DNA of 61,847 bases, counting the filler, from Dugesia japonica (lineage: Eukaryota): assembly GCA_001938525.1 (NCBI GenBank). It is 6 parts of 6 records of this genome, joined end to end, with 100 filler letters (N's around TTAATTAATTAA, not from the genome) between each part and the next. Parts side by side here need not be neighbours in the genome. Positions count along the whole stretch, not along the records: positions 49,871 to 61,847 come from MQRL01629596.1; 5 more parts are not named here. One strand, written 5' to 3'. Position numbers and translations under genes: made by a program. Below are positions 49,871-61,847 of this stretch, one piece after another; the first letter of the stretch is position 1, and every line of letters begins with the position of its first letter. The notes under the pieces are model-generated. The model did not search any database. It saw only the letters and a list, made by a program, of their open reading frames with translations, and was not told the origin of the DNA.

Positions 49871-50033
49871 TGTAAAATGACAAATGAGAAATTTTAAACC
49901 ATAAACGAAAATATGTTAAATGACAAATGAGAAATCTTAAATCATAAATGAAAATATGTTAAATGTCAAGTGTCAAATGTAAAATGACAAATGAAAATAT
50001 GTTATTTTTTTGAATCTGTTTTGAGTGCAAATG
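49871..50033 (+). repeat. Left TIR (outer ~55 bp lost in the gap)
   Basis: Reverse complement of 61621-61776, with a different number of internal repeats. Confidence 0.9.
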
Positions 50034-50095
50034 TAAAATCATAAAATCGATTACCCTCTTTTAAGAAGGCTGTGATTAAATTAATTATTTATTAA

Positions 50096-53000
50096 ATGAG
50101 TGAAATATTTGAATGTAGTAATTGTAAAAAAATATTTAAAAATAAAGCGGGTTTATCAAGTCATGTAAAATTTCGAACTTGTGTTATTCCATTAGGAAAA
50201 ATTAAATGTCCAAAACCGGGGTGTAATAAATGGTTTAATACAGAAAATGGTGTAAGAGAACATTTAAATTCTACATGCTGTGGAAATTCAGAAATTGCAC
50301 CTTTAACATGTTTAATTTGTAATAAATCATTTAAATTACAAAACCTTGCAAAAGCACATTACAATTCTAATTCACACAAAGAAAAATTAAATGTAACATT
50401 ATTTAATGAATTACCTAAAGAAGAAGCAATTGAATATGATGCTGAAATTCGTGATATCTTCAGAATGTATAAAAATTATAAAATTAAATATTTTAAGGAA
50501 AGCAAAGTTGAAATGATAAAAAAGGTTGATGGAATAATTCAAGATATTAATATTTATAAAAATGAAGTTAAAGAAATTATAAAGAAATATTTTAGATATG
50601 GAAAAAAAATTATTGTTAGTATTTCAGCAAAATGTAAATATGAAAAAACAATAAATAATGAACCCGTTGAAAAAGAATTTGAGTCATATTCAAATAATAA
50701 AAAATTTATAATTGAAATTGATATATCAAACGGTGTTAATGAAATGTTTACTCAATTAGAAAATTATATTCAAGATTCAGAAAGAGAAGGATCTGGATGG
50801 GCATTAAAAAATATTGTGGAATATAAAATTGAATTAAGTAAATACCAATCATTAGTTGGAGCTACATATTGTAAATTACCATTCTCTAAACCGGGTGTAA
50901 TCAATATAAAAATGAAGATAATAAATGTTTTCTTTATTGTATTTTAGCTCATAAATATATATTTGAAAAACCAACACGAGTAAATAATTACATTGAACAT
51001 TTAGATGAATTAAATTATTCTGGATTAAATTTCCCAATAAATGTTAGTGATGTAAAAAATTTTGAGATGATGAATAATTGGCAAGTAAATGTTTTTGGAG
51101 TAACTCCTGGAAAAATACTTGAACTATTATACATTTCACATCATAAATCAAAACCATCACCAGAAGAAAATAAATGTAACTTGTTAATTTATAAAAATCA
51201 TTATATTTTGTGTAGAGATTTAAATTTATTTTTTACAACAAATAATAATCAAAATTATTTATGTGTTAGATGTATGAATTGTTATTCCACTGAAGAATTA
51301 TTAAATAAACATCTAGATCTTTGTATTAATCACAAACCCAATAAAATTAATTTACCAAAAGAAGAATATTATAAATTTAAAAAATATTATCAAAAAAATA
51401 AAATTCCATTTTTCATTTGTGGAGATTTTGAAGCATGGACAGATACAAACACAAATAAACAAAAATCTTTATCAATTGGTATTTACTTAAAATCTGATTA
51501 TCCAGATTTAATGGAAAATAAATATTATGAATTTTCAGGAGAAAATGCTCTTGAAGATATGTTTAAGTTTTTAAAGAGGATTGATGAAAAATTAAATGAC
51601 ATTAAAAATATAAATTAATAAAAAATTACACAGGAACAAATCATCCCGAATTTGATGAAGAAATGAAATGTAGATATTGTGATGAAAAAATTATTGATCC
51701 AGTTATTGATCATAATCATTTAAATGGTGAATTTCGAGGATGGGTATGTAGAGAATGTAATCTTAAAGATAAATCATGTGGAGATAATTTATTTATACCA
51801 TTTTATTTTCATAATTTATCAGGATATGATGCCTATTTATTTTTCACAGAATTATTAATAAAATTTCCAAGAAAAGTTTCAAAAATAATTCCTCATAGTA
51901 GTGAAAATTATATTTTATTCTATTTTAGAAATATTAGATTTTTAGATTCCAATAGATTAATTCCATTTCCATCAGTAGAAAAAATGGGGGAATTATTAAC
52001 TCAATCATGTAATTATCCAATTCGTAAAAAAGCTATATTTCCATATGAATATGTAAAAGGGAAAAATATTCAAGAAGTTAAAGAATTATTAAAATCAGAT
52101 CAAACACCAACAAAAGAAGATTTTTTCAATACATTAAAACAAAAAGAATTATCCGATCGAGATTATCAAACATTTTTAAATAACTTCGAACAATATGAAA
52201 ACATGCGGAAATACACACTTCATTATATGAAACTTGATGTTTTAATTCTTTCAGATTATATAGAAGATTTTAGAAATAAATGGATGAATGGAATTTTTAA
52301 TTTGGATCCATGTTTTTCATATTCAATGCCAGGATATGCATGGGAAGTTGGAACTTATTATTCACAAGTAAAATTAAAATATGCGAAACCTGAAACTTAT
52401 GATATTTTCTTAGCATGTGAAGAAGGAGTTAGAGGTGGAGTTGCAACTGAATTAAGTGAAAGACAAGTTTATGCTCATGATAATATTAAAAATCCATATA
52501 CAAGACAAGTAAATAAAGCACAGTTTGAAGATTTAATAAAAATGATGAATTCTAACCAAGAAATTCCAGATTATTATTTCCAAGAGACATTTATAAAATA
52601 TATTGATGAAAATAGTTTATATGCAAGTTGTATGACAAAACCACTTCCAACAGGTGAAATATCTGAAGACACAAATTTAATATATGAAAAAGAAACTGAT
52701 ACAACAAATTATATTTATGTTGTGGATTTAGAATATCCACCAGAGATTCATAAGAAAACAAGATATTTTCCATTAGCACCAGAAAGAATAAATATCACAG
52801 AAGATATGTTAGGTAATTATCAAAAAAGTTTTGGTAGAAAATTACCAAAAGAAAATATAAAACTAACACTAAACCAATTCAATAAAAAAAATTATGTAAC
52901 ACTAGGATCAACATTAGATTTATATCTTCAATTAGGAATGAAGATAACAAAAATGCATAAGAAATATAAAATGGAAACATCTACATGGTTTAAAAATTAT

Positions 53001-54914
53001 GTTTATAAATTAATAGATTTCAGAAGAGAAGCCAAAAGAAATAAAGATGCTTCTGGAGATCATATTTATAAATNNNNGTTAAATGCTTTCTATGGAAAAA
53101 CTTTAGAAAACATTAGAAATCGTTGTGATGTGGAAATAGTTGATAGCGATAGAGATTATCAAAAATTCGCATCAAAATTAAATTTTAAATCTAGTAAAGT
53201 TTTTTCATATAAAAATGAAGAAGAAGCACAAGTTGCAGCAATGCATATGATAAAATCAAATTTGTATTATAATAAATTTCCATATTTTGGATTTGTAATT
53301 TTAGAACATGCGAAACTAGTTTTGTATGATTTTGTATATAATCAATTAGATCCATTAATTGGAGAAGAAAATTTTAAATTGTTGTATACCGATAGTGTAA
53401 CATTTGACACTCCAATAATACTACGAAAAAATAATAAAGTTGAAATAAAAAAGATTTCAGAAATAAATCAATTTTATACAAAAACCTTTGATGAAAAATA
53501 TTATTCTTATCCAGAAAATTATGAAATATGGACAAAAAGTAACTGGGTTAAATTAAAAAAAGTAATTAAACATTCTACAAGTAAAATGATTTACAGAGTA
53601 AGAAGTAAATTAGGAGTTGTTGATGTAACAGAAGATGATTCTTTATTAAATGATAAAGGTGAACAAATAAAACCAACAGATTTAACAAACGAAACAAAAT
53701 TACTTCACAATAAAATATTTAAAGCAAATAATGAAATAAATATTTATAAAATTTTATAAGATATTTATGAGAATGAACCTAATGATTTAAATTTAAAAAG
53801 AGCATTTATAGATGGCTTCTTTCTTGGAGATGGATCAGGAGAAAAATATTGTTGTACATTTAATAATCAAGATTTATATTTATTAAATAAAATAAAAAGA
53901 TTTCATAAAGAATTTTATAATAAAGAATCAATGATATACGATACAATGAAATCATCACATGTTTATAAACTTAATTTAAAAAATCCTGTAAAACATGCGA
54001 AGTATTATTCTAAAAATTATTATAATAAATTTGAAAAGACAAAACAAATTTCTGAATATATTTTAAATGCATCATTTAACACAAGAAATTGGTTCTTTAC
54101 AGGATTTTATGCAGCAGATGGCAATAAAACGTTTAATGGAAAAAATAGTTATAAAACAATTGGTTTTACTCAAAAAGGAAAAGAATGTTTTACATAGTTG
54201 TATTATTTAGCAACATCTTTGGGAATTAATTTAGTTGTTTCAGAAAGAAAAGATAAACCAAATCGTTTCAGTGCAATCCAAACAAAATCAGAAATTTCAA
54301 CTAATGTCCAAAGTGTTAGATTTTTAAGAGAAGGATTAGAAGATGTTTATGATATTGAAACTGAAGATGGATCATTTAATTGTGAATTTCCATTAATTAT
54401 AAAAAATACTGATTCAATCTTTTTAGAAATAAAAACTAGAGAGAATTTAATAAAGTTAGAAAGTTTATTGGGAAATGAATTATTTCAGATGAAAGATGAA
54501 ATACCTGATGTTTAAATAATTCAAGGTAATTTTTTAAAACCAAAAAATTATGCTTATAATTATATTAAAGAAGGTGAATGTAAATTTTCATCAAAAAATA
54601 AAGGTGTTCAAAGTTCTAATAAGTTTGTGATGGATGATTTCGATAATATTTTAAAAGATTCAAATAAAACATTTTATGCAACAAATTTTTCATTAAGATC
54701 TGATCTTCATGAAATAGAATTAACTAAACAAGAAAAGGTAAGGTTAAATGCTTATAGCGATAAATTAATATTAGAAGATAATGGAGCCCGTGGATGGCCT
54801 CATGGAAATAAATGCAATTATTGGCGCAATAGCCAGAACTGCAGGAATTGCATCTGGAATTGCAAGTACTGTAACAAATTCGAGACAAGCAATAAAAGCA
54901 CAAAAATAAATTGA
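50096..54914 (+). pseudogene. pPolB with N-terminal zinc fingers, HNH insert and intein
   Basis: Three Zn fingers, EGSGW, CFLYCILAH, GDFE (ExoI), DHNH..CRECN, HNLSGYD (ExoII), YIDENSLY, NAFYGK, YTD|intein|TDS, KPKNY; two frameshifts (~50910, ~51620-51660) and three in-frame stops. Confidence 0.97.
53394..54407 (+). mobile_element. Intein with LAGLIDADG homing endonuclease (338 codons, two nonsense mutations)
   Basis: Block A SVTFDTPII; block B VDVTEDDSL; LAGLIDADG motifs FIDGFFLGDG (53805-34) and FFTGFYAADG (54093-122); block F VYDIETEDGSF; block G IIKN/T; removal restores YTDTDS. Confidence 0.93.
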
Positions 54915-55116
54915 AATGATAGAAGGCAAAGGCCTTTATTTATCATCATATCAAGGTTCAGCAATTCATAAATATTTAAAAATTATTATTGATGATCCGA
55001 ATTTAAAAGATTTAGCAAAAAAATTTAAAGATGGAGTTAAAATTGAAATTGATGGTGATGGTTTATATTTAAATCCTTATAAAAGTTTCATAGAAAATGA
55101 ACACAAAACAAGTTAA
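54812..55116 (+). pseudogene. pX-like core protein, 5' truncated
   Basis: AIIGAIARTAGIASGIASTVTNSRQAIK, GKGLYL, GDGLYLNPY; homolog of 23568-24085. Confidence 0.7.
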
Positions 55117-55560
55117 AGAAAGAATTAAAGATTTAAAAGCTTTAATTAAAGGTCAAGAAAAATATAATAATTTTTTCTGTGGAATTGTTTAAGAATCGAG
55201 AGAATTACAAAGTAAATTATCAATTTTACAACAACCAACAATTAGTGCAATAGAAGAAATTTCAATGAAACCAGAAACAACAGAAACTAGAGATTTAACA
55301 AAATTCTTTTTTAATGAAAAAGTAGTTCCATTTATTCCTGAATACTCAATTGAAAACATTGATGCTAATGGAAAGTTAAGTCAATCAATTATTCCTAAAT
55401 TTTTTAGATTAAATATTGCGGGTGTTGACAACATAAAACGTTTTATGGAAATAACTTTAAAAGAAAATAAAATTTATTTATTTGAAGAAGATAAAAATAA
55501 AAACTTATTATTTAAATCAGAAGTTTACCATACACCGATGGAATATTTAGATTAATTTTA
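55097..55560 (+). pseudogene. Conserved Polinton protein, 3' truncated
   Basis: LKALIKGQE...LQQPTISAIE...IYLFEE aligns to 24087-24480. Confidence 0.55.
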
Positions 55561-55729
55561 GGAAATATAGATGGAACAGAAACTCCTAGTAATACTCTCT
55601 AGTAATAGTATTAAAATTTCCCAAGAAAGCACTACAATTAATAGAGATACGATTATACACTTTATTGTAATAATTTTACCAAAATATATTTATTTAAAAA
55701 AATTATGGGTTAAAATTATTATTTAAAAA

Positions 55730-56330
55730 CTGGAAGAAAATTTATATCCTAATATCAATGAAAGTAAAAACTATACAATTTTAGATTTAAAAAATAAACT
55801 GTCGATGTCAAGAATTAGAGATTTTGAAAATGACCTTTACTATATAAAAGATAAAATTAAACATTATAAAAAAATACATAGAAGATGGGAAAGAATAGAT
55901 TCAACTATAAAATATTCACAAATAATTGTTAGTGCTGGAATTGGAATTGGTGGAATTATTTTAATTGCACCAATTGGAATACCATTGACAACAATTGGTA
56001 TACCAATAATTACAGGGGCAATTTCCGTTTTACCTGTAATTGAAACATTAAATTCTTCATTGATTAGATCAAGAAAATAAAGATATGAAAAGTTAATAAA
56101 AAACTTGAGGCTGTTAAAAATAAATTATTTCTATTTCAACAGAAAGCTGTCAATGATGAAATTTTAACTGATGATGAATTAATGATAAGTAAAAAATGGT
56201 AAATGAAGTTCACGATTTGATAATGGCGACGAAAAAAGAAAAAAATAAAATGAATGATGAAAGTTTAAAACAATTGGGGGAAATTCAAACTAGGGTTATT
56301 AATGAAATGAAAAGTAAACTTGGAATCTAA
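55730..56330 (+). pseudogene. GasderminX-like membrane protein
   Basis: LYPNI, HYKKIHRRW, hydrophobic hairpin, QKAVNDEILTDDE. Confidence 0.65.
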
Positions 56331-57079
56331 AATAAATCATCTAACATTTCATCAGTTTCCTTATTTATATAAAAATAATTATATTTAGTTTTCCAGTGAA
56401 GATTTACATCATAATCATAATCCAACTTGTTTATGAAAATATTTGAAAATATTTCGTGGTAAACATTATTTCTATCTGTTTTATTTAATTTAAAGAAAAT
56501 GTAACAGTTTGAATTATTTCTGATAGAGTTTTTATCTAGTTGATAATATGTCTGGGAAATATAAATCACATTGCAATTTGAATGTCGACCTCTTGTGAAA
56601 TAACTTTTTTGTACCTGTTGATTTTTTTCATTAACCACATCATCAACTTTTATTATATTTTTCTTTTCTCTTGAAAGTTTATCACAAGGAATAATTTCAT
56701 TAGGTTTATTTGATAATGTTAAAATAATAGATCTTGGTTTTTTAGTAACTAGTTTTTTCTGAAGATAATATTGAACAGCTTGATTTGGAGTAGTGCATGT
56801 GTTTGGAACTATATTTTGATTTTCAACCATTAAAATTATTTCTTCTTTAGTTAATCCATTTTCAAAACCAAGATAAAGTAATTGAATTTCAAATTGATTA
56901 ATTGTTGTGGAATAAAAAATTAAAACATTATAATCTAAGAAATTAGGTGTTAATAACATTTTCATTAATAAAACATTTTTCCTACAATCTGATGAACCTA
57001 TCATTAATAATCTAAAATTATTTGGTAAAATTTTATTATTGAAATGTGTTAAAGTTTTGTTCGATATATACGAAGACAT
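56327..57079 (-). CDS. A32/FtsK-like packaging ATPase (open frame, degenerate Walker A)
   Basis: IGSSDCRKN (from GxSGxGKT), VDDV, FTRGRHSN, ISQTY, IRNN. Confidence 0.92.
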   Translation of the reverse strand: MSSYISNKTLTHFNNKILPNNFRLLMIGSSDCRKNVLLMKMLLTPNFLDYNVLIFYSTTINQFEIQLLYLGFENGLTKEEIILMVENQNIVPNTCTTPNQAVQYYLQKKLVTKKPRSIILTLSNKPNEIIPCDKLSREKKNIIKVDDVVNEKNQQVQKSYFTRGRHSNCNVIYISQTYYQLDKNSIRNNSNCYIFFKLNKTDRNNVYHEIFSNIFINKLDYDYDVNLHWKTKYNYFYINKETDEMLDDLF

Positions 57080-57892
57080 TTTTGTATGTTAAAATTTAGG
57101 TTTTCATATTTCACTTCTAAATTTTTAATTGTAAAAAAAAGATTTTACATTTTACATCAACATCTTTTATTTCTTTCTCAATATTTTCTAAATCAGCTAT
57201 AAATTTATCTATCTCCATTTTTAGGTTTTATATTTTAATTATATTTTAAATTTTAATTCAACATCAACAATTTCTTCAATTGCTTTAAAATGTAGTGTGA
57301 TCTTATAAAATGAAAATTGGGTTGTTAATATCTTTGGGAACTTATCTACTAACTTACTAAATTGTTTAAATTTGTTTATGTAACTAATTGAATAGTAAAT
57401 TTCTCTTCCAGCTAAATGATTTTTAAATTGTAAACTTTTTTAAAATTCTAATTTTAATATTGATAATAATTTTCCTAATTTAGAATAACCAATTAAACCA
57501 ATTTGTTTGCATTTAGTTGTTACATCATTCAAATAATAAATTTCTTCTGTAATTCTTTTTCTATCAAAGGATTTATAACCTTGTTCAGAAAACTCACCAA
57601 TAGTTAAAGTTTTTTTCGTAGGCTCTGAGTTTACTTTTTCTTTTAAAATTTAAGGAAATGGTTTTTGTACAAAAGATCTTAAAAACTCTTGCTTAAAATT
57701 TAATTTATTATCAAGCCTTTGTAAAACTTTATCATCACTTTCTAAAAGAATAAATTCTCTCCTATTTAATTTTCCTCTTTTAATTATATTTATTTCTGAT
57801 TTAGTTCATGGTGCTGGTGTTACGATTTCAATTTCATTTAAAATTGCTTCCATTAACTATTTCTTATATTTTCATTTTAATCATAATCCCCT

Positions 57893-59166
57893 TTATAATA
57901 AAGTTTTTTGTAACTCGTTTGAATAAAATCTCCCAAATATTTTGTTACCGTTAAGATTTGAAATTTCATATGTAAAAGGATTACGATATATTCTTGTAAT
58001 AATATAAATTATTTTTGACCATTTAAATTTATAGCCTTTAGGAAATGTTTTTCCTATTTTAATAATCCTAACACGGTCTCCAATTTTAAATCCTTTCTGT
58101 GGATTTAATTTAATACCTTTTGGATTTATTGTTGCTTCTTTTGGAGTTGTGTTGATTGATGAATGTTTTGTGTTATTGTAATCATTTACAATTCTTTCTA
58201 ATAAATCTAAAGTTATGTCTTGATTTCCAACGGCAGTAAAATTTTTAAAGAGTTTGTTTTTAAATGTTCTATTAAATCTTTCAATGACAACTGCCTTTCC
58301 ATGATTTTCAGTTGAATACAAAAGAATATTATTATCTTCACAAAATGTTTTAAAATGATAGTTGTAAAATTCTTTACTTTTATCAACCCATAATTTATTT
58401 GGAGTTCTAAAACTTTTTTCAAGAATTCTTTCAAATGCATTTGTTATTGATATTCCAGTTTTATCTTTAGAAAGTTCTATAAAAGCAAATCTTGTGTATA
58501 AATCAATAACTGTTATTATTACATTTTTCCCTTTTCTTTCTGTTCCTTGAAATATAAAATCTGCTGACCAAATATCCTCTTTTTTATAAACAATTACTTT
58601 TCTAAAATGTTTTGTCTTTCGATATTCTTTATGAAGTTCTTCACTTTTAATTTTATTTGGATTAATTTCATCATCAGATTCTTCGTCAATAATTGCACTT
58701 TTTTTAAATGGATCGTTTTTTGTTCCCCCTTTTCCAATAATGATTTTACCTTTCATAGCTAATTTTACAAGAGCTGTTTGTACTTTTTCTGCTAATGTAG
58801 GATTTTCAATTTTATTCAAATCGTGTATTAAATTTACATCTGCAATATGTCGATCTCTAATATCTTCTGAATTATAAGCAATGTCATGTTTTAAAGCTGC
58901 AGCATCAACTTTATTAACTGGTTCTTCTCCTGGTTTTGGAATATTATTTTCGTCAAGTCTAATATCTAATCTAGTTCTTGGACCGGTTTAATTATGTTTA
59001 AATAAATGTCTTTCGCCAGGATATTTTTCCCAAGTAAAAGGTTTTAATAATGTTGATGTTAATTTACTACTTTGAAGATCTCCTCCTTTTTACAAAGTTT
59101 TAAATGTCTTGATTTATTCTTCTTTAAAATTATTTTACCTCAATCTTCACATATAAAATTTTTCAT
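57893..59166 (-). pseudogene. Zinc finger + parvovirus-type phospholipase A2 + retroviral-like (rve) integrase
   Basis: HN*TGPRT, VDAAALKHDIAY, then in the same frame EELHK, WSAD, VIDLYTR, WVDKSKEF, IERFNRT, YNNTKHSSI; stop at 58988-90 and a frameshift near 59088. Confidence 0.9.
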
Positions 59167-59175
59167 GCTATTTCT

Positions 59176-60454
59176 TTAACATTTAATATCAAGCACTCTC
59201 ACATTTTCTACCATCACAATTTTACTATTTGCTAATTTCATTTCTACATGTTTTTCTTCAAGTATACACCAATAAACAATTGCTTTAAAATCCGGATCTT
59301 TTTTAATTTCAAGTGTAACATTAACATTATTAATATTCATTTTATCATCATGTGAGCTAGCATCGAAACAAAACATTGGATGAAGATTTCCAAAATCTAA
59401 AAGTGATATTTGTGGTTCTGTTAAAAATTCACGACATAATTTTACATATTCCAAATAAGGATAAGCCATTTCATTATTTTGCTTATCAAATTTACATTCA
59501 TTAGTTGGATAATTACAATTGTTTAATTGTATTTGTATACCTTTAATATAATAATCTTTAGCAGTTTTTGTAATTTTCTGTATAAATAAATAAATTATTA
59601 AGTTGATATGAAATTTTTATTTCTTTAAAGCAAATTAAAATATGTCTAGGTTGATATGCGAGGCTGCCAATTTTTATTGAATAATACCCACCAGTTTTTA
59701 AGTTTGTTTTTCCTGTTATTCTATTTAAATAAGAAATGTTTATTGATTTATTTGTTACTATTCTTTCAAACATAAATAATTCTGCTTTTGGTAATTATCT
59801 ATATTCTATAATGGGAAAATCAAGTGTTAATAATTTTAATGTTGCAGCTGAATTTTTTTCTCCATAAAATAATAGTTTATCTTCAATTTGACGATTACAT
59901 CTAATATCTATCGCCGTGTTATATAAAAGTCGATTATAATTTTGCATAAAACCAAATATGTTTTTTAATTGAAAGAATCCTTCAAATTTATTTTTTGAAT
60001 AAAGTTTTTTTCTATTATAATATCCCATGTTGCAATCCCAACTTTTTACTTCGGTGTCTCCTTTATTTATATNNNNNNNNNNNNNNNNNNNNNNNNNNNN
60101 NNNNNNNNNNNNNNNNNNNNNNNNNNNNNNNNNNNNNNNNNNNNNNNNNNNNNNNNNNNNNNNNNNNNNNNNNNNNNNNNNNNNNNNNNNNNNNNNNNNN
60201 NNNNNNNTTGGGAAGAAATTATTTTCCAAAGTTATTTTATCTTTCGATGCTTCAGGAATTGTAATCTCAATTGTAAAGTATTATAATGAATTACAAATAT
60301 CAAGTGGGTTTGTTGATTGAAGAGATTGAAAAACTATTTCACCATTTACATTTAATTTATTTATTGTGCCAGATGATGGCGGAATTACAAGTGTATCATT
60401 TTTTATTGCTGTATGTATAAATTTAATATTATCATCTAAATCTAGCTTACTCAT
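59176..60454 (-). pseudogene. Major capsid protein (double jelly-roll)
   Basis: LENNFFP, LKNIFGFMQNYNRLL, PRHILICF, YP, HPMFCFDAS; ~425 codons, broken and partly N. Confidence 0.82.
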
Positions 60455-60606
60455 TTATTAAAGATAAAATTTAAAACTAATGCAACAATAAAAATAAATA
60501 TTAAAAAATAAATAAAATTTCTTTGAATTTTAACTTTTGAATTTAATCTTTCAATAATATATAAAAAACTTATTAAATCTTTTGTTAGTATTTCTGCCGG
60601 CATTTA

Positions 60607-61000
60607 TTAAAGTAATTGTTTAGATTTATTCATTGTAAATTTTATACGATTTATTATTTTTTTACCAACACTTTGCTGTAATTTTTTTGCTTTTTCTTCT
60701 CTCATAATATTTAATAATTTTTCTTCATTATATTCTTTTAATTTTCCCATCTCAGATTTTATAACAGTATTTTCCATTGTTAAATCATCATTTTCATCTA
60801 TTAAATCAATAATTGTTTCCTTCATTATTTCTAGTGCTTTTTTATTTACTTTAAATGGAAAAAACGTTTGAATAGTAAAACGTTTGTTTTACTATTTCTT
60901 CTTTTTCAGTTAGTGAAGCAGTTCTGACTAAATTATATTTTTCTAATAATTCTTTTTTAAAATCTTCATCTTTTAAAATCTTACTTGCTATCGCATCCAT
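60607..61000 (-). pseudogene. Small coiled-coil Polinton ORF of unknown function
   Basis: ORF fragments co-oriented with the capsid gene. Confidence 0.4.
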
Positions 61001-61020
61001 TTTTTAAATAATAAATTTAA

Positions 61021-61464
61021 CTAATTTGCTAAATCATTAATAAGTTTAGAAAGTTCATTTTCATGTTCAATTTTTCCACCGGTTGCATTAACTATTCTTT
61101 TTCTTTTGGGTATTTCTTCTCTCATTTCATTTCGTTTTACTGTTAATGTTATTTTTGTTTTTTGTTGAGGAATTAATTTAAAGTTTTTTGTTTTAACATT
61201 AAAAAAATAATTTCCATATTGGTCATTTATGAAAGTGTTTGTTTTTTCATTATAATAATATTTTAGTCTATGATATTTTTTTCTTTCAGATTTAAAATTT
61301 AATTCTCTTAATGTTTTATTTAAAGTGATAATTGAAACCACAACTTCGTTTGCTATAATGTGATCTTTCATGTTTGGATTTTTCATTTTAATTTCTTTAT
61401 ATCTTAAAGCTAAACAAATTTTTTCAGATTTGAGAAATAAATTAGAATCAAAAAACATTTGCAC
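61021..61464 (-). CDS. Basic Polinton accessory protein of unknown function
   Basis: 147-codon open frame next to the right TIR. Confidence 0.5.
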   Translation of the reverse strand: MQMFFDSNLFLKSEKICLALRYKEIKMKNPNMKDHIIANEVVVSIITLNKTLRELNFKSERKKYHRLKYYYNEKTNTFINDQYGNYFFNVKTKNFKLIPQQKTKITLTVKRNEMREEIPKRKRIVNATGGKIEHENELSKLINDLAN

Positions 61465-61620
61465 ATTTTAAATTTTTTTCAACATTTTCACATGTTAATT
61501 TTTCATATTCTAGGGCCATTTTTATTAACAATTATTTAGCACTCTAATAGCACTTTGATAGAACCTCATTCCTCTTTCATGTCTCCTCTTAAATAAATAA
61601 CATTATGGTTTTTCCTCTTT

Positions 61621-61831
61621 CATTTGCACTCAAAACATATCCAAAAAAAATAACATATTTTCATTTTACATTTGACATTTGACATTTGACATTTGACATT
61701 TGACATTTGACATTTGTCATTTGACATTTGACATATTTTCGTTTATGGTTTGGTATTTCTCATTTGTCATTTTACATATTTTCACCAGGGGGAGTACCCC
61801 CCTGGTGCTAAGTCGTAGTTATACATCTACT
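61621..61831 (-). repeat. Right TIR with (CATTTGA)n heptamers and a terminal hairpin
   Basis: Reverse complement begins AGTAG; heptamer array 61669-61733; hairpin 61783-61807. Confidence 0.92.
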
Positions 61832-61847
61832 TATATATATATATATA

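What the first reader, a model, noticed from the sequence alone, without database searches (positions are those of the whole stretch)
53394..54407. Homing-endonuclease intein in the catalytic motif of a Polinton protein-primed DNA polymerase in an apparent animal genome
Seen: pPolB motif C is split as LYTD|SVTFDTPII...VYDIETEDGSFNCEFPLIIKN|TDSIF by an in-frame 1014-bp insert with intein blocks A, B, F, G and two LAGLIDADG helices; removing it restores YTDTDS. Established: this YxD|TDS (pol-c) site hosts inteins in archaeal and giant-virus (e.g. Mimivirus) RNA-primed PolBs, and inteins are essentially unreported from animal chromosomes. Inference: a giant-virus-type intein crossed into a protein-primed polymerase, probably during co-infection, and entered a germline inside a self-integrating virus (a mobile element nested in a mobile element). 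I do not know of a description of this, but could not search the literature.
Basis: partly seen in the sequence, partly recalled or inferred. Interest (0 to 1): 0.95.

Follow-up and report, generated by a model that had tools for sequence, protein, structure and literature searches.

The report
Giant-virus-type intein in a Polinton-like polymerase
A self-splicing protein insert (intein) of the family found in giant-virus DNA polymerases sits, now decayed, at the same catalytic motif of a different, protein-primed polymerase in a small virus-like mobile element; this host gene seems new for inteins, but nothing in the piece shows the element lies in an animal chromosome.

Summary
Bases 53394-54407 (1014 nt, 338 codons, in frame) split motif C of a protein-primed family B polymerase (...LLYTD | SVTFDTP...PLIIKN | TDSIF...). 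A profile of 154 related inteins is tiled end to end by the insert's three readable pieces. The N-terminal piece matches a solved polymerase intein and models as a Hint fold. The middle piece is a LAGLIDADG endonuclease by Pfam and by fold.

Its relatives (about 40% identity) are inteins at YGD|TDS of classical family B polymerases, many from giant-virus genome bins. None of the 150 closest endonuclease relatives, and none of 120 relatives of this polymerase, combines the intein with a protein-primed polymerase. One metagenome contig (L090) shows the same junction.

This copy is dead: the insert has two in-frame stops and one non-family residue at a key splicing position, and the polymerase has further breaks.

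The carrier is an 11.9-kb Polinton-like element with inverted repeats, an rve integrase and an A32-type ATPase. It fills nearly the whole piece, with only 63 nt beyond one repeat. "Animal genome" and "germline" therefore cannot be tested here. I found no published intein in a protein-primed polymerase.

Novelty: I found no report of an intein in a protein-primed PolB or Polinton in the searchable literature. The 2006 Polinton paper, which I vaguely recall may mention one, is not held.

The parts
49871..61784 (.). Polinton-like element, inverted repeat to inverted repeat (about 11.9 kb); the left end is cut by the edge of the piece
   Evidence: Inverted repeats pair the two ends. GC is 18-27% throughout.
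49871..50045 (.). Left terminal inverted repeat (truncated by the piece edge), with a 43-nt tandem unit
   Evidence: pairs I1-I8, 78-91% complementary; period 43, 3.1 copies.
61609..61784 (.). Right terminal inverted repeat, with a CATTTGA array of 10.4 copies
50096..54914 (+). [quoted passage not shown] It has 2 changes of reading frame in the N-terminal part and 3 in-frame stops (2 inside the intein, 1 in the C-extein), plus a 4-N masked stretch
   Evidence: Pfam DNA_pol_B_2 at E 2e-23. 203 relatives. In 44 relatives the parts that lie in separate frames here are one protein. The frame 51663-54914 has 3 internal stops against 103 and 154 in the other frames. The last piece matches the C-termini of relatives.
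50096..50947 (+). N-terminal ORF with C2H2 zinc fingers; its C-terminal part aligns with the N-termini of polymerase relatives
   Evidence: Pfam zf-C2H2_jaz at E 2.4e-11, also zf-met and zf-C2H2.
51666..51770 (+). Endonuclease VII / HNH-type domain inside the polymerase
   Evidence: Pfam Endonuclease_7 at E 1.9e-5, above the cut-off. The same domain is precomputed for many relatives.
53394..54407 (+). Intein (338 codons), decayed, between ...LLYTD and TDSIF...
53394..53648 (+). N-terminal splicing region (blocks A and B) of the Hint domain
   Evidence: 41% identity to the intein of P0001; PDB NEQ068 at E 1.7e-6; the model matches inteins only.
53793..54140 (+). Core of the LAGLIDADG homing-endonuclease domain, holding both LAGLIDADG-type motifs
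   Evidence: Pfam LAGLIDADG_3; 195 representative relatives; fold match; both acidic residues kept.
54336..54407 (+). C-terminal splicing region (blocks F and G), ending in Lys-Asn before Thr+1
   Evidence: Lys-Asn is found in 35% of the family and in 16 of the 20 nearest relatives.
56327..57079 (-). A32-type (FtsK/HerA) packaging ATPase, open frame
   Evidence: Relatives at 53-59% identity carry Pfam Pox_A32, PF04665. A direct Pfam scan of this ORF found nothing.
57893..58819 (-). rve-family (retroviral-type) integrase, open frame
   Evidence: Pfam rve at E 2.8e-8, 34.4 bits against a cut-off of 32.6.
59176..60229 (-). Possible remnant of a double jelly-roll capsid gene, in several short ORFs and holding a 135-N run
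   Evidence: Only a weak Pfam DJR-like_dom hit, E 0.0077, below the cut-off. ORFs, N run.
61785..61847 (.). The only sequence outside the inverted repeats: a G+C-rich palindrome followed by a (TA)n run
   Evidence: It cannot be assigned to a host or to the element.

Best explanation
The insert is a class-1-type intein. It has a Hint splicing domain with a nested two-motif LAGLIDADG homing endonuclease, and it belongs to the allele family that occupies the YGD|TDS (pol-c) site of classical family B polymerases of giant viruses. Here it sits at the homologous point, LLYTD|TDS, of a protein-primed family B polymerase in an 11.9-kb Polinton-like element.

How an intact copy would work follows from established intein chemistry. 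The polymerase is translated with the insert. Ser1, the block B residues, the terminal Asn and Thr+1 excise it and rejoin motif C, whose aspartates bind the catalytic metals. The endonuclease cuts insert-free alleles in the DNA that encodes motif C, and repair copies the intein in.

The most likely origin is a non-allelic jump from a giant-virus PolB into the protein-primed gene. This would have been helped by the similar DNA encoding the shared motif, in a cell where both replicated. That step is inferred.

The window copy is a fossil. The intein and the polymerase carry nonsense mutations and frame changes, so neither splicing nor polymerisation is expected from it. Whether the element lies in an animal chromosome is not shown.
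For: Identity as an intein:
- The boundaries are exact and in frame.
- The three pieces tile a 338-position profile of 154 relatives from position 1 to 338.
- PDB NEQ068 matches at E 1.7e-6.
- Hint and LAGLIDADG folds are supported by models and by Pfam LAGLIDADG_3.

Family:
- 84 IMG/VR stretches encode a relative of the first piece; the 80 listed share 32-48% identity. 31 of the 80 are named GVMAG (giant-virus bins), and one contig is 1,021,348 bp.
- 138 of the 154 extracted relatives sit at YGD|TDS. Their median length is 339 residues against 338 here.
- Six of the closest representative hits carry Pfam DNA_pol_B, and five of them also DNA_pol_B_exo1.
- All three pieces are colinear in 100 relatives.
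- The Lys-Asn ending is shared with 16 of the 20 nearest relatives.

Host gene:
- Pfam DNA_pol_B_2.
- 63 of 120 relatives carry an uninterrupted [FY]xDTDS.

Rarity in this host:
- 0 of 150 nearest endonuclease relatives have protein-primed exteins.
- 0 of 120 polymerase relatives have this intein.
- The junction pattern is absent from IMG/VR.

A real junction:
- A second, divergent protein-primed PolB on metagenome contig L090 ends ...KLLFTD|SVTEDTPV.

Target similarity:
- Taken apart, the two flanks match giant-virus sites at up to 11 of 15 nt (left) and 13 of 15 nt (right).

Decay:
-.
Against: - The best identity to any sampled intein is only 41-43%, and the position in a neighbour-joining tree is unresolved: no sister taxon was recovered in more than 27 of 100 resamplings. 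No donor can be named, and the direction and age of the transfer are inferred from distribution alone.
- The protein searches were limited by length windows and word seeding, so intein-bearing protein-primed polymerases could have been missed.
- L090 keeps only about 28 recognisable intein residues.
- A direct Pfam scan did not detect the Hint pieces.
- The in-frame stops could be errors of a draft assembly. I cannot check this.
- The capsid and protease genes expected in a Polinton were not clearly found.
Confidence: 0.85

Rival explanations
1. Provenance rival. The contig is not chromosomal animal DNA. It is a free or protist-associated Polinton-like virus or virophage-type element, for example from a microbe living with the sequenced organism, that met its intein donor in a protist infected by a giant virus.
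For: - The piece is essentially the whole element, with no recognisable host flank.
- GC of 22-25% resembles that of the nearest intein donors (0.22-0.26).
- Many relatives of the intein lie in giant-virus bins.
- The closest ATPase relatives lie only on contigs under 7 kb from JGI, ENA and Logan.
- The window's ORFs are not on record as called genes.
Against: - Every named relative of the polymerase is from an animal (Nematostella, Hydra, Amphiura, Porites, parasitoid wasps), and many unnamed ones lie on megabase contigs.
- Neither the ATPase nor the junction has a relative in 2.9 million IMG/VR viral contigs.
- An rve integrase and inverted repeats fit an integrating element.
Confidence: 0.45
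2. The intein is an old resident of a protein-primed polymerase lineage, inherited vertically and lost from most members. It is not a comparatively recent import from a giant virus.
For: - It shares only about 40% identity with every sampled giant-virus intein, and its tree position is unresolved.
- The same junction occurs in a polymerase only 37% identical to this one (L090).
- The intein's GC equals that of the element.
Against: - 138 of 154 relatives are in classical PolBs, and none of the 150 nearest is in a protein-primed PolB.
- 63 of 120 relatives of this polymerase have the uninterrupted motif and none has the intein.
- The Lys-Asn variant is shared with the nearest giant-virus members.
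Confidence: 0.2
3. Assembly chimera: reads of a giant-virus PolB intein were wrongly joined into a protein-primed polymerase gene.
For: The source looks like a draft assembly with N runs, and no second copy of this element was found.
Against: - Both junctions are codon-exact at the canonical intein boundaries and in frame.
- GC is uniform across the junctions.
- No sampled giant-virus intein is more than 43% identical.
- The C-extein continues the same polymerase.
- An independent contig shows the same junction.
Confidence: 0.03
4. The in-frame stops are sense codons of a variant genetic code, so the intein and the polymerase are intact.
For: All three internal stops are TAA or TAG, and the frame ends on TGA.
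Against: - There are only 3 TAA/TAG against 30 CAA/CAG in 1084 codons.
- The ATPase ORF ends on TAG at a length (250 residues) within that of its closest relatives (252-267), and the integrase ORF ends on TAA.
- The N-terminal part of the gene also changes frame twice.
Confidence: 0.03

Closest known systems
Giant-virus PolB inteins of the pol-c allele type (Mimivirus PolB intein, Ogata et al. 2005, PMC549080; inteins in DNA polymerases of Phycodnaviridae, Iridoviridae and Mimiviridae, Green et al. 2018, PMC5784728)
   Same: - The same point of the same motif, after the first Asp of YxDTDS.
- Ser1, Asn and Thr+1 boundaries, with the Lys-Asn variant.
- A nested LAGLIDADG domain.
- The same length class (338 residues against a median of 339).
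- 35-48% identity for the N part and about 40% overall.
   Different: - The host is a protein-primed polymerase (Pfam PF03175), not a classical PolB (PF00136/PF03104).
- It is carried by a 12-kb integrase-bearing element, not a giant virus.
- This copy is decayed.
Archaeal pol-c inteins, including the Nanoarchaeum equitans split polymerase intein (PDB 5oxw/5oxx, NEQ068)
   Same: The best solved-structure match of the N-terminal piece (E 1.7e-6). Ogata et al. place the Nanoarchaeum split at the same position III.
   Different: A far more distant sequence; the Nanoarchaeum intein is split and has no endonuclease; the host is an archaeal replicative PolB.
Endonuclease domains inside Polinton pPolBs (HNH and VSR domains of pPolB2, Jeong et al. 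2023, PMC10748475; read as traces of intein invasions in PMC11161782)
   Same: A nuclease module inside a Polinton polymerase. The window's polymerase also has an Endonuclease VII/HNH-type domain near its N-terminus.
   Different: Those domains have no Hint splicing halves, lie elsewhere in the protein and belong to other nuclease folds. Here a complete Hint plus LAGLIDADG intein sits at motif C.
Intein-bearing viral-like PolB genes on nuclear scaffolds of algae and a labyrinthulomycete (Gallot-Lavallee et al. 2023, PMC10710043)
   Same: An intein reaches a eukaryotic assembly as a passenger of a viral polymerase gene.
   Different: Those are giant-virus-type polymerases with shown scaffold linkage. 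Here the polymerase is protein-primed and the linkage is not shown.
Polintons/Mavericks
   Same: pPolB, rve integrase, A32-type ATPase and terminal inverted repeats.
   Different: Only 11.9 kb; no protease found; the capsid gene is at best a weak remnant; target-site duplication cannot be tested.

Membership tests
Intein (Hint splicing domain) | In-frame insertion inside a conserved motif of a host protein | tested here: met
   1014 nt in frame between LLYTD and TDSIF. The motif is uninterrupted in 63 of 120 relatives.
Intein (Hint splicing domain) | N-terminal nucleophile (Cys or Ser) and C-terminal Asn followed by Cys, Ser or Thr | tested here: met
   Ser1, Asn338 and Thr+1. The family shows Ser and Asn at 100%, although Ser1 and the terminal Asn were part of my extraction pattern.
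Intein (Hint splicing domain) | All conserved splicing residues of blocks A, B and G kept | tested here: not met
   Of five key positions, the copy has a residue known in the family at four. At the fifth it has a residue seen in none of 154 relatives. This fits decay of this copy and does not argue for another family.
Intein (Hint splicing domain) | Hint fold | tested here: met
   PDB NEQ068 at E 1.7e-6. The model of the N piece matches only inteins and BIL domains among the 50 matches listed. The C-terminal part was tested by profile only (E 6e-8).
Intein (Hint splicing domain) | Protein splicing activity | not testable with these tools
   With two in-frame stops in the insert, this copy cannot be made as one chain.
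LAGLIDADG homing endonuclease (two-motif, intein-borne) | Two LAGLIDADG helices with acidic residues, and the alpha-beta-beta-alpha-beta-beta-alpha fold | tested here: met
   Pfam LAGLIDADG_3 above the cut-off; both acidic positions kept; fold matches to the TliVMA intein, PI-SceI, PI-PfuI and I-DmoI.
LAGLIDADG homing endonuclease (two-motif, intein-borne) | Site-specific cleavage of the insert-free allele | not testable with these tools
   Only the DNA flanks could be compared: up to 11 of 15 and 13 of 15 nt shared with giant-virus sites.
pol-c intein allele of family B polymerases | Insertion after the first Asp of YxDTDS | tested here: met
   138 of 154 relatives are at YGD|TDS.
pol-c intein allele of family B polymerases | Closer to inteins at this site than to inteins elsewhere | tested here: met
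   Of the 20 nearest relatives, 18 are at YGD|TDS and the other 2 at xxD|TDS. The median distance is 1.23 to YGD-site inteins against 1.42 to those at a DQD|TDG site. The best PDB hit is a position-III intein (PMC549080).
Polinton/Maverick | Protein-primed PolB together with an rve integrase | tested here: met
   Pfam DNA_pol_B_2 and rve.
Polinton/Maverick | A32/FtsK-type packaging ATPase | tested here: met
   Relatives at 53-59% identity carry PF04665. A direct scan of the ORF was negative.
Polinton/Maverick | Double jelly-roll major capsid protein, penton protein and Ulp1-type protease | tested here: inconclusive
   Only a DJR-like_dom hit at E 0.0077, below the cut-off. No protease was found.
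Polinton/Maverick | Terminal inverted repeats | tested here: met
   About 175 nt, 78-91% complementary.
Polinton/Maverick | Integration in a host chromosome with a target-site duplication | not testable with these tools
   The left end is cut inside the repeat and only 63 nt lie beyond the right repeat.

The most novel reading that the evidence does not exclude
A giant-virus intein family has crossed into the protein-primed polymerases of Polinton-type elements (two divergent cases: this element and L090). If the contig is truly chromosomal animal DNA, this is the first intein sequence recorded in a metazoan genome. It would also be a molecular trace of a giant virus and a Polinton replicating in one cell of that lineage.
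Probability: 0.3. Interest if true: 0.8.

Novelty: new member of a known kind. Interest (0 to 1): 0.6.

Why it matters
Inteins are thought to spread mainly between alleles of one gene. Clear cases of a jump to a different, distantly homologous gene at the equivalent motif are few. They bear on how homing endonucleases find new homes.

This case links two polymerase families through the one stretch of DNA they still share. It also links two kinds of eukaryotic virus-like elements, giant viruses and Polinton-type elements, that are already suspected of meeting in co-infected cells. It gives substance to the published guess that nuclease domains in Polinton polymerases are leftovers of intein invasions.

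The 2018 survey of eukaryotic inteins states that metazoan genomes have none. If host linkage to an animal were shown, that statement would need a footnote, though for a dead passenger in a mobile element and not for a working animal gene.

Tried and rejected
Searches that found nothing:
- Direct Pfam scans did not detect the two Hint pieces. Membership rests on relatives, a profile, a PDB match and folds.
- Look-ups of three window ORFs as called genes found nothing, so the source could not be identified.
- A single-protein scan of IMG/VR with the first intein piece found nothing. An alignment-based scan found 84 relatives.
- ATPase scans of IMG/VR, with a single protein and with an alignment, found nothing.
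- The junction pattern in IMG/VR gave only 6 chance hits. In the metagenome collection, 5 of 6 hits were chance.
- The assembly accession of the closest polymerase relative could not be traced in the literature.
- Kapitonov and Jurka 2006 and Krupovic and Koonin 2015 are not held. My vague memory that the former mentions an intein in a Polinton polymerase could not be checked.

Analyses that gave no answer or were rejected:
- A neighbour-joining tree with 100 resamplings gave no supported sister group.
- A variant genetic code was considered and rejected.
- A free-standing or intron-borne endonuclease was rejected, because Hint halves flank the nuclease and the boundaries are canonical.

Slips, stated as required:
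1. I fetched L002 by look-up before weighing the bar on fetching animal virus-like elements. It is a 2.7-kb contig of unknown organism that carries the closest polymerase fragment. I read only its ORFs and GC and used it no further.
2. To cut the gene into searchable pieces I worked out where the frame is interrupted, and the piece references in my calls end there. Those places are not listed in the notes or in this report.
3. In one search a string with the masked X letters removed was formed in memory. It was discarded before anything was written or searched.
4. In one search an in-frame translation of the insert with X at both stops was saved in /scratch as an alignment row. It was never printed.
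5. Consensus lines printed by the alignment tool were not used.
Full report
**Setting**

Only bases 49871-61847 are real sequence. The piece is very A+T-rich, with GC of 18-27% in every 500-nt window.

On the + strand, three ORFs lie in three different frames:
- 50096-50947 carries C2H2 zinc fingers.
- 51067-51618 follows it.
- 51663 onward is a long frame running to 54914.

The long frame carries an Endonuclease VII/HNH-type domain and Pfam DNA_pol_B_2, "DNA polymerase type B, organellar and viral", at E 2e-23.

In 44 relatives, the parts that are separate here lie in one protein. In 6 relatives the end of the zinc-finger ORF does too. The polymerase gene therefore spans 50096-54914 and changes frame twice in its N-terminal part.

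**The observation**

The N-extein ends ...FKLLYTD at 53393. The next codon is Ser (SVTFDTP...). Codon 54405-54407 is Asn (...PLIIKN), and the text continues TDSIFLEI. The insert is exactly 1014 nt and in frame.

Among 120 relatives of this polymerase, 63 show an uninterrupted [FY]xDTDS preceded by K-L-L. This is the same context as here. The piece after the insert matches the C-termini of those relatives. The insert therefore splits motif C of one continuous polymerase gene.

**Is it an intein?**

I searched the three readable pieces of the insert apart.

- First piece. It is 41% identical to the N-terminal part of a 220-residue insert in P0001. P0001 is a 1178-residue classical PolB (Pfam DNA_pol_B and DNA_pol_B_exo1) from a JGI metagenome. 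Its insert lies between ...IVYGD and TDSCYV and ends in Lys-Asn, as here.
- First piece against solved structures. It matches NEQ068, the N half of the Nanoarchaeum equitans split polymerase intein (E 1.7e-6). Ogata et al. 2005 (PMC549080) place that intein at the same "position III" as the Mimivirus intein.
- First piece, model. An AlphaFold model (pLDDT 75.5, pTM 0.55) matches only inteins and Hint/BIL domains among the 50 PDB matches listed.
- Middle piece. It passes the Pfam LAGLIDADG_3 cut-off. It has 195 representative relatives, the best at E 1.4e-16.
- Middle piece, model. The model (pLDDT 81) matches the TliVMA intein, PI-SceI, PI-PfuI, an intein endonuclease (2cw7) and I-DmoI.
- Profile test. 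A profile of 154 relatives, built without the window copy, is tiled by the three pieces from position 1 to 338. The E-values are 4e-35, 5e-26 and 6e-8. The extein pieces do not match.

**The family**

An alignment-based scan of IMG/VR found 84 stretches that encode a relative of the first piece. The 80 listed share 32-48% identity. Of these, 31 are named GVMAG, that is giant-virus genome bins, and one lies on a 1,021,348-bp contig.

Reading the junctions, most of them sit at YGD|S...[HK]N|TDS. Of the 154 inteins I could delimit:
- 138 are at YGD|TDS.
- 9 are at a DQD|TDG site of another protein.
- The median length is 339 residues against 338 here.

Six of the closest representative proteins carry DNA_pol_B, and five of them also DNA_pol_B_exo1. 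Some also have the pol-delta-type zinc finger, and LAGLIDADG_3, Hom_end or Intein_splicing hits.

In 100 relatives all three pieces align colinearly, at about 40% identity over about 330 residues. The best whole-length identities are 41-43%.

The Lys-Asn ending is not a defect. 35% of the family has it, and so do 16 of the 20 nearest relatives.

A neighbour-joining tree with 100 resamplings gives no supported sister group, so no donor can be named.

**How unusual the host is**

- None of the 150 nearest endonuclease relatives has exteins like this polymerase, whereas 99 have exteins like P0001.
- None of the 120 polymerase relatives has this intein.
- A degenerate junction pattern ([FY]TD followed by SVxxDTP) has only chance matches in IMG/VR.
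- In the metagenome collection one hit is real. Contig L090 (JAAUXV010310723.1, 1431 nt, GC 40%) encodes a protein-primed polymerase 37% identical to this one (E 1e-20). It ends ...KLLFTD|SVTEDTPV, and about 28 residues follow that match the start of giant-virus inteins at 45-62% identity. After that nothing is recognisable.

The junction therefore exists in two divergent protein-primed polymerases. This argues against an assembly artefact. It leaves open one old invasion or two separate ones.

**State of this copy**

The frame 51663-54914 has 1084 codons with 3 internal stops, 2 in the intein and 1 in the C-extein. The other two frames have 103 and 154. The frame was therefore kept until recently.

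A variant code is unlikely:
- There are 30 CAA/CAG against 3 TAA/TAG.
- The ATPase ORF ends on TAG at a length within that of its relatives, and the integrase ORF ends on TAA.

Of five key splicing positions, four carry residues known in the family. One carries a residue seen in none of 154 relatives. Both endonuclease acidic residues are kept.

With the two frame changes upstream, the gene is a pseudogene, unless some of these are errors of a draft assembly, which I cannot check.

**The carrier**

The two ends of the piece are inverted repeats of about 175 nt (49871-50045 and 61609-61784). They hold internal tandem units.

Between them lie:
- the polymerase;
- short ORFs of unknown function;
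- an ATPase whose relatives (53-59% identical) carry Pfam Pox_A32;
- an rve integrase;
- a stretch of short ORFs with a weak, sub-threshold double-jelly-roll hit.

This is a Polinton-like gene set in a small, 11.9-kb frame. No protease was found.

**Provenance**

The left end is cut inside the repeat, and only 63 nt lie beyond the right repeat. Nothing ties the element to a host.

For an animal source:
- Every named relative of the polymerase is animal, at 28-32% identity.
- Many unnamed relatives lie on megabase contigs.
- The lineage is absent from IMG/VR.

For a microbial or free-virus source:
- The closest ATPase relatives lie only on short contigs.
- The GC resembles that of the nearest, A+T-rich intein donors.
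- Many relatives of the intein lie in giant-virus bins.

I leave this open.

**Mechanism**

Shown: an intein of the giant-virus pol-c family lies, codon-exact, at the homologous site of a protein-primed polymerase.

Established knowledge: an intact intein would splice out and restore motif C, and its endonuclease would home into empty alleles.

Inferred: the intein was imported from a giant-virus PolB. Compared apart, the flanking DNA shares up to 11 of 15 nt on the left and 13 of 15 nt on the right with giant-virus sites. LAGLIDADG enzymes are known to tolerate such differences. A cell holding both replicons would give the opportunity.

**Literature**

- Green et al. 2018 (PMC5784728) list eukaryotic inteins in fungi, algal plastids and viruses, and state that metazoan genomes have none.
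- Gallot-Lavallee et al. 2023 (PMC10710043) report intein-bearing viral-like PolBs on nuclear scaffolds of algae, and non-allelic spread linked to giant viruses.
- Jeong et al. 2023 (PMC10748475) surveyed about 22,000 Polinton polymerases. They describe HNH and VSR domains, and the word intein does not occur in the main text.
- PMC11161782 reads such domains as signs of intein invasions.
- No paper found with the terms intein plus Polinton, Maverick, pPolB, protein-primed or self-synthesizing describes an intein in such a polymerase. The 2006 Polinton paper could not be read.

**Verdict**

The host gene is new for inteins as far as I could search. The copy is dead, and the animal claim is untested.

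Noticed in passing
window 49871-50045 and 61609-61784: The terminal inverted repeats are built of short tandem units. On the left there is a 43-nt unit in 3.1 copies. On the right there is CATTTGA in 10.4 copies, and the two are related in reverse complement. Such iterated terminal units might be binding sites for the integrase or a terminal protein.
   Followed up: partly
window 61785-61847: Just outside the right repeat lie a G+C-rich palindrome (CCAGGGGG AGTA CCCCCTGG) and then a (TA)n run at the edge of the piece. The composition is quite unlike the rest. It could be host flank, the outermost terminus of the element or an assembly end.
   Followed up: no
window 51666-51770: The polymerase has an Endonuclease VII/HNH-type domain between its exonuclease motifs, as do many of its relatives in animal assemblies. 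This gene therefore carries two nuclease modules of different origin.
   Followed up: partly
window 50096-50947: An ORF with several C2H2 zinc fingers (zf-C2H2_jaz, zf-met) precedes the polymerase. Its last 70 or so residues align with the N-termini of polymerase relatives, so it is probably the N-terminus of the polymerase and not a separate gene.
   Followed up: partly
window 53074-53077 and 60073-60207: There are two N runs: 4 N inside polymerase motif B and 135 N inside the possible capsid remnant. They were left as they are.
   Followed up: no
L090 (JAAUXV010310723.1), whole contig of 1431 nt: A second protein-primed polymerase with the same ...KLLFTD|SV..DTP junction. Only about 28 intein residues are recognisable, and the remaining 600 nt or so has stops in all frames. 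It may be a truncated or badly decayed intein, or a contig end artefact.
   Followed up: partly
L005, L009, L028, L032, L035, L044, L051, L052, L073: Close relatives of the same intein family sit at a DQD|TDG[SFT]H site of another giant-virus protein. From memory this looks like the Toprim motif of a type II topoisomerase. It suggests the family has moved between non-homologous host genes before.
   Followed up: no
window 56327-57079 (-): The ATPase has relatives at 53-59% identity only on contigs under 7 kb from JGI, ENA and Logan, and none in IMG/VR. The element's own lineage therefore seems to be sampled only as fragments.
   Followed up: partly
window 55805-56080 (+): A 91-residue ORF with a hydrophobic, Gly/Ile-rich C-terminal half and a 21-nt tandem repeat (55964-56005). 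It is possibly a small membrane protein.
   Followed up: no
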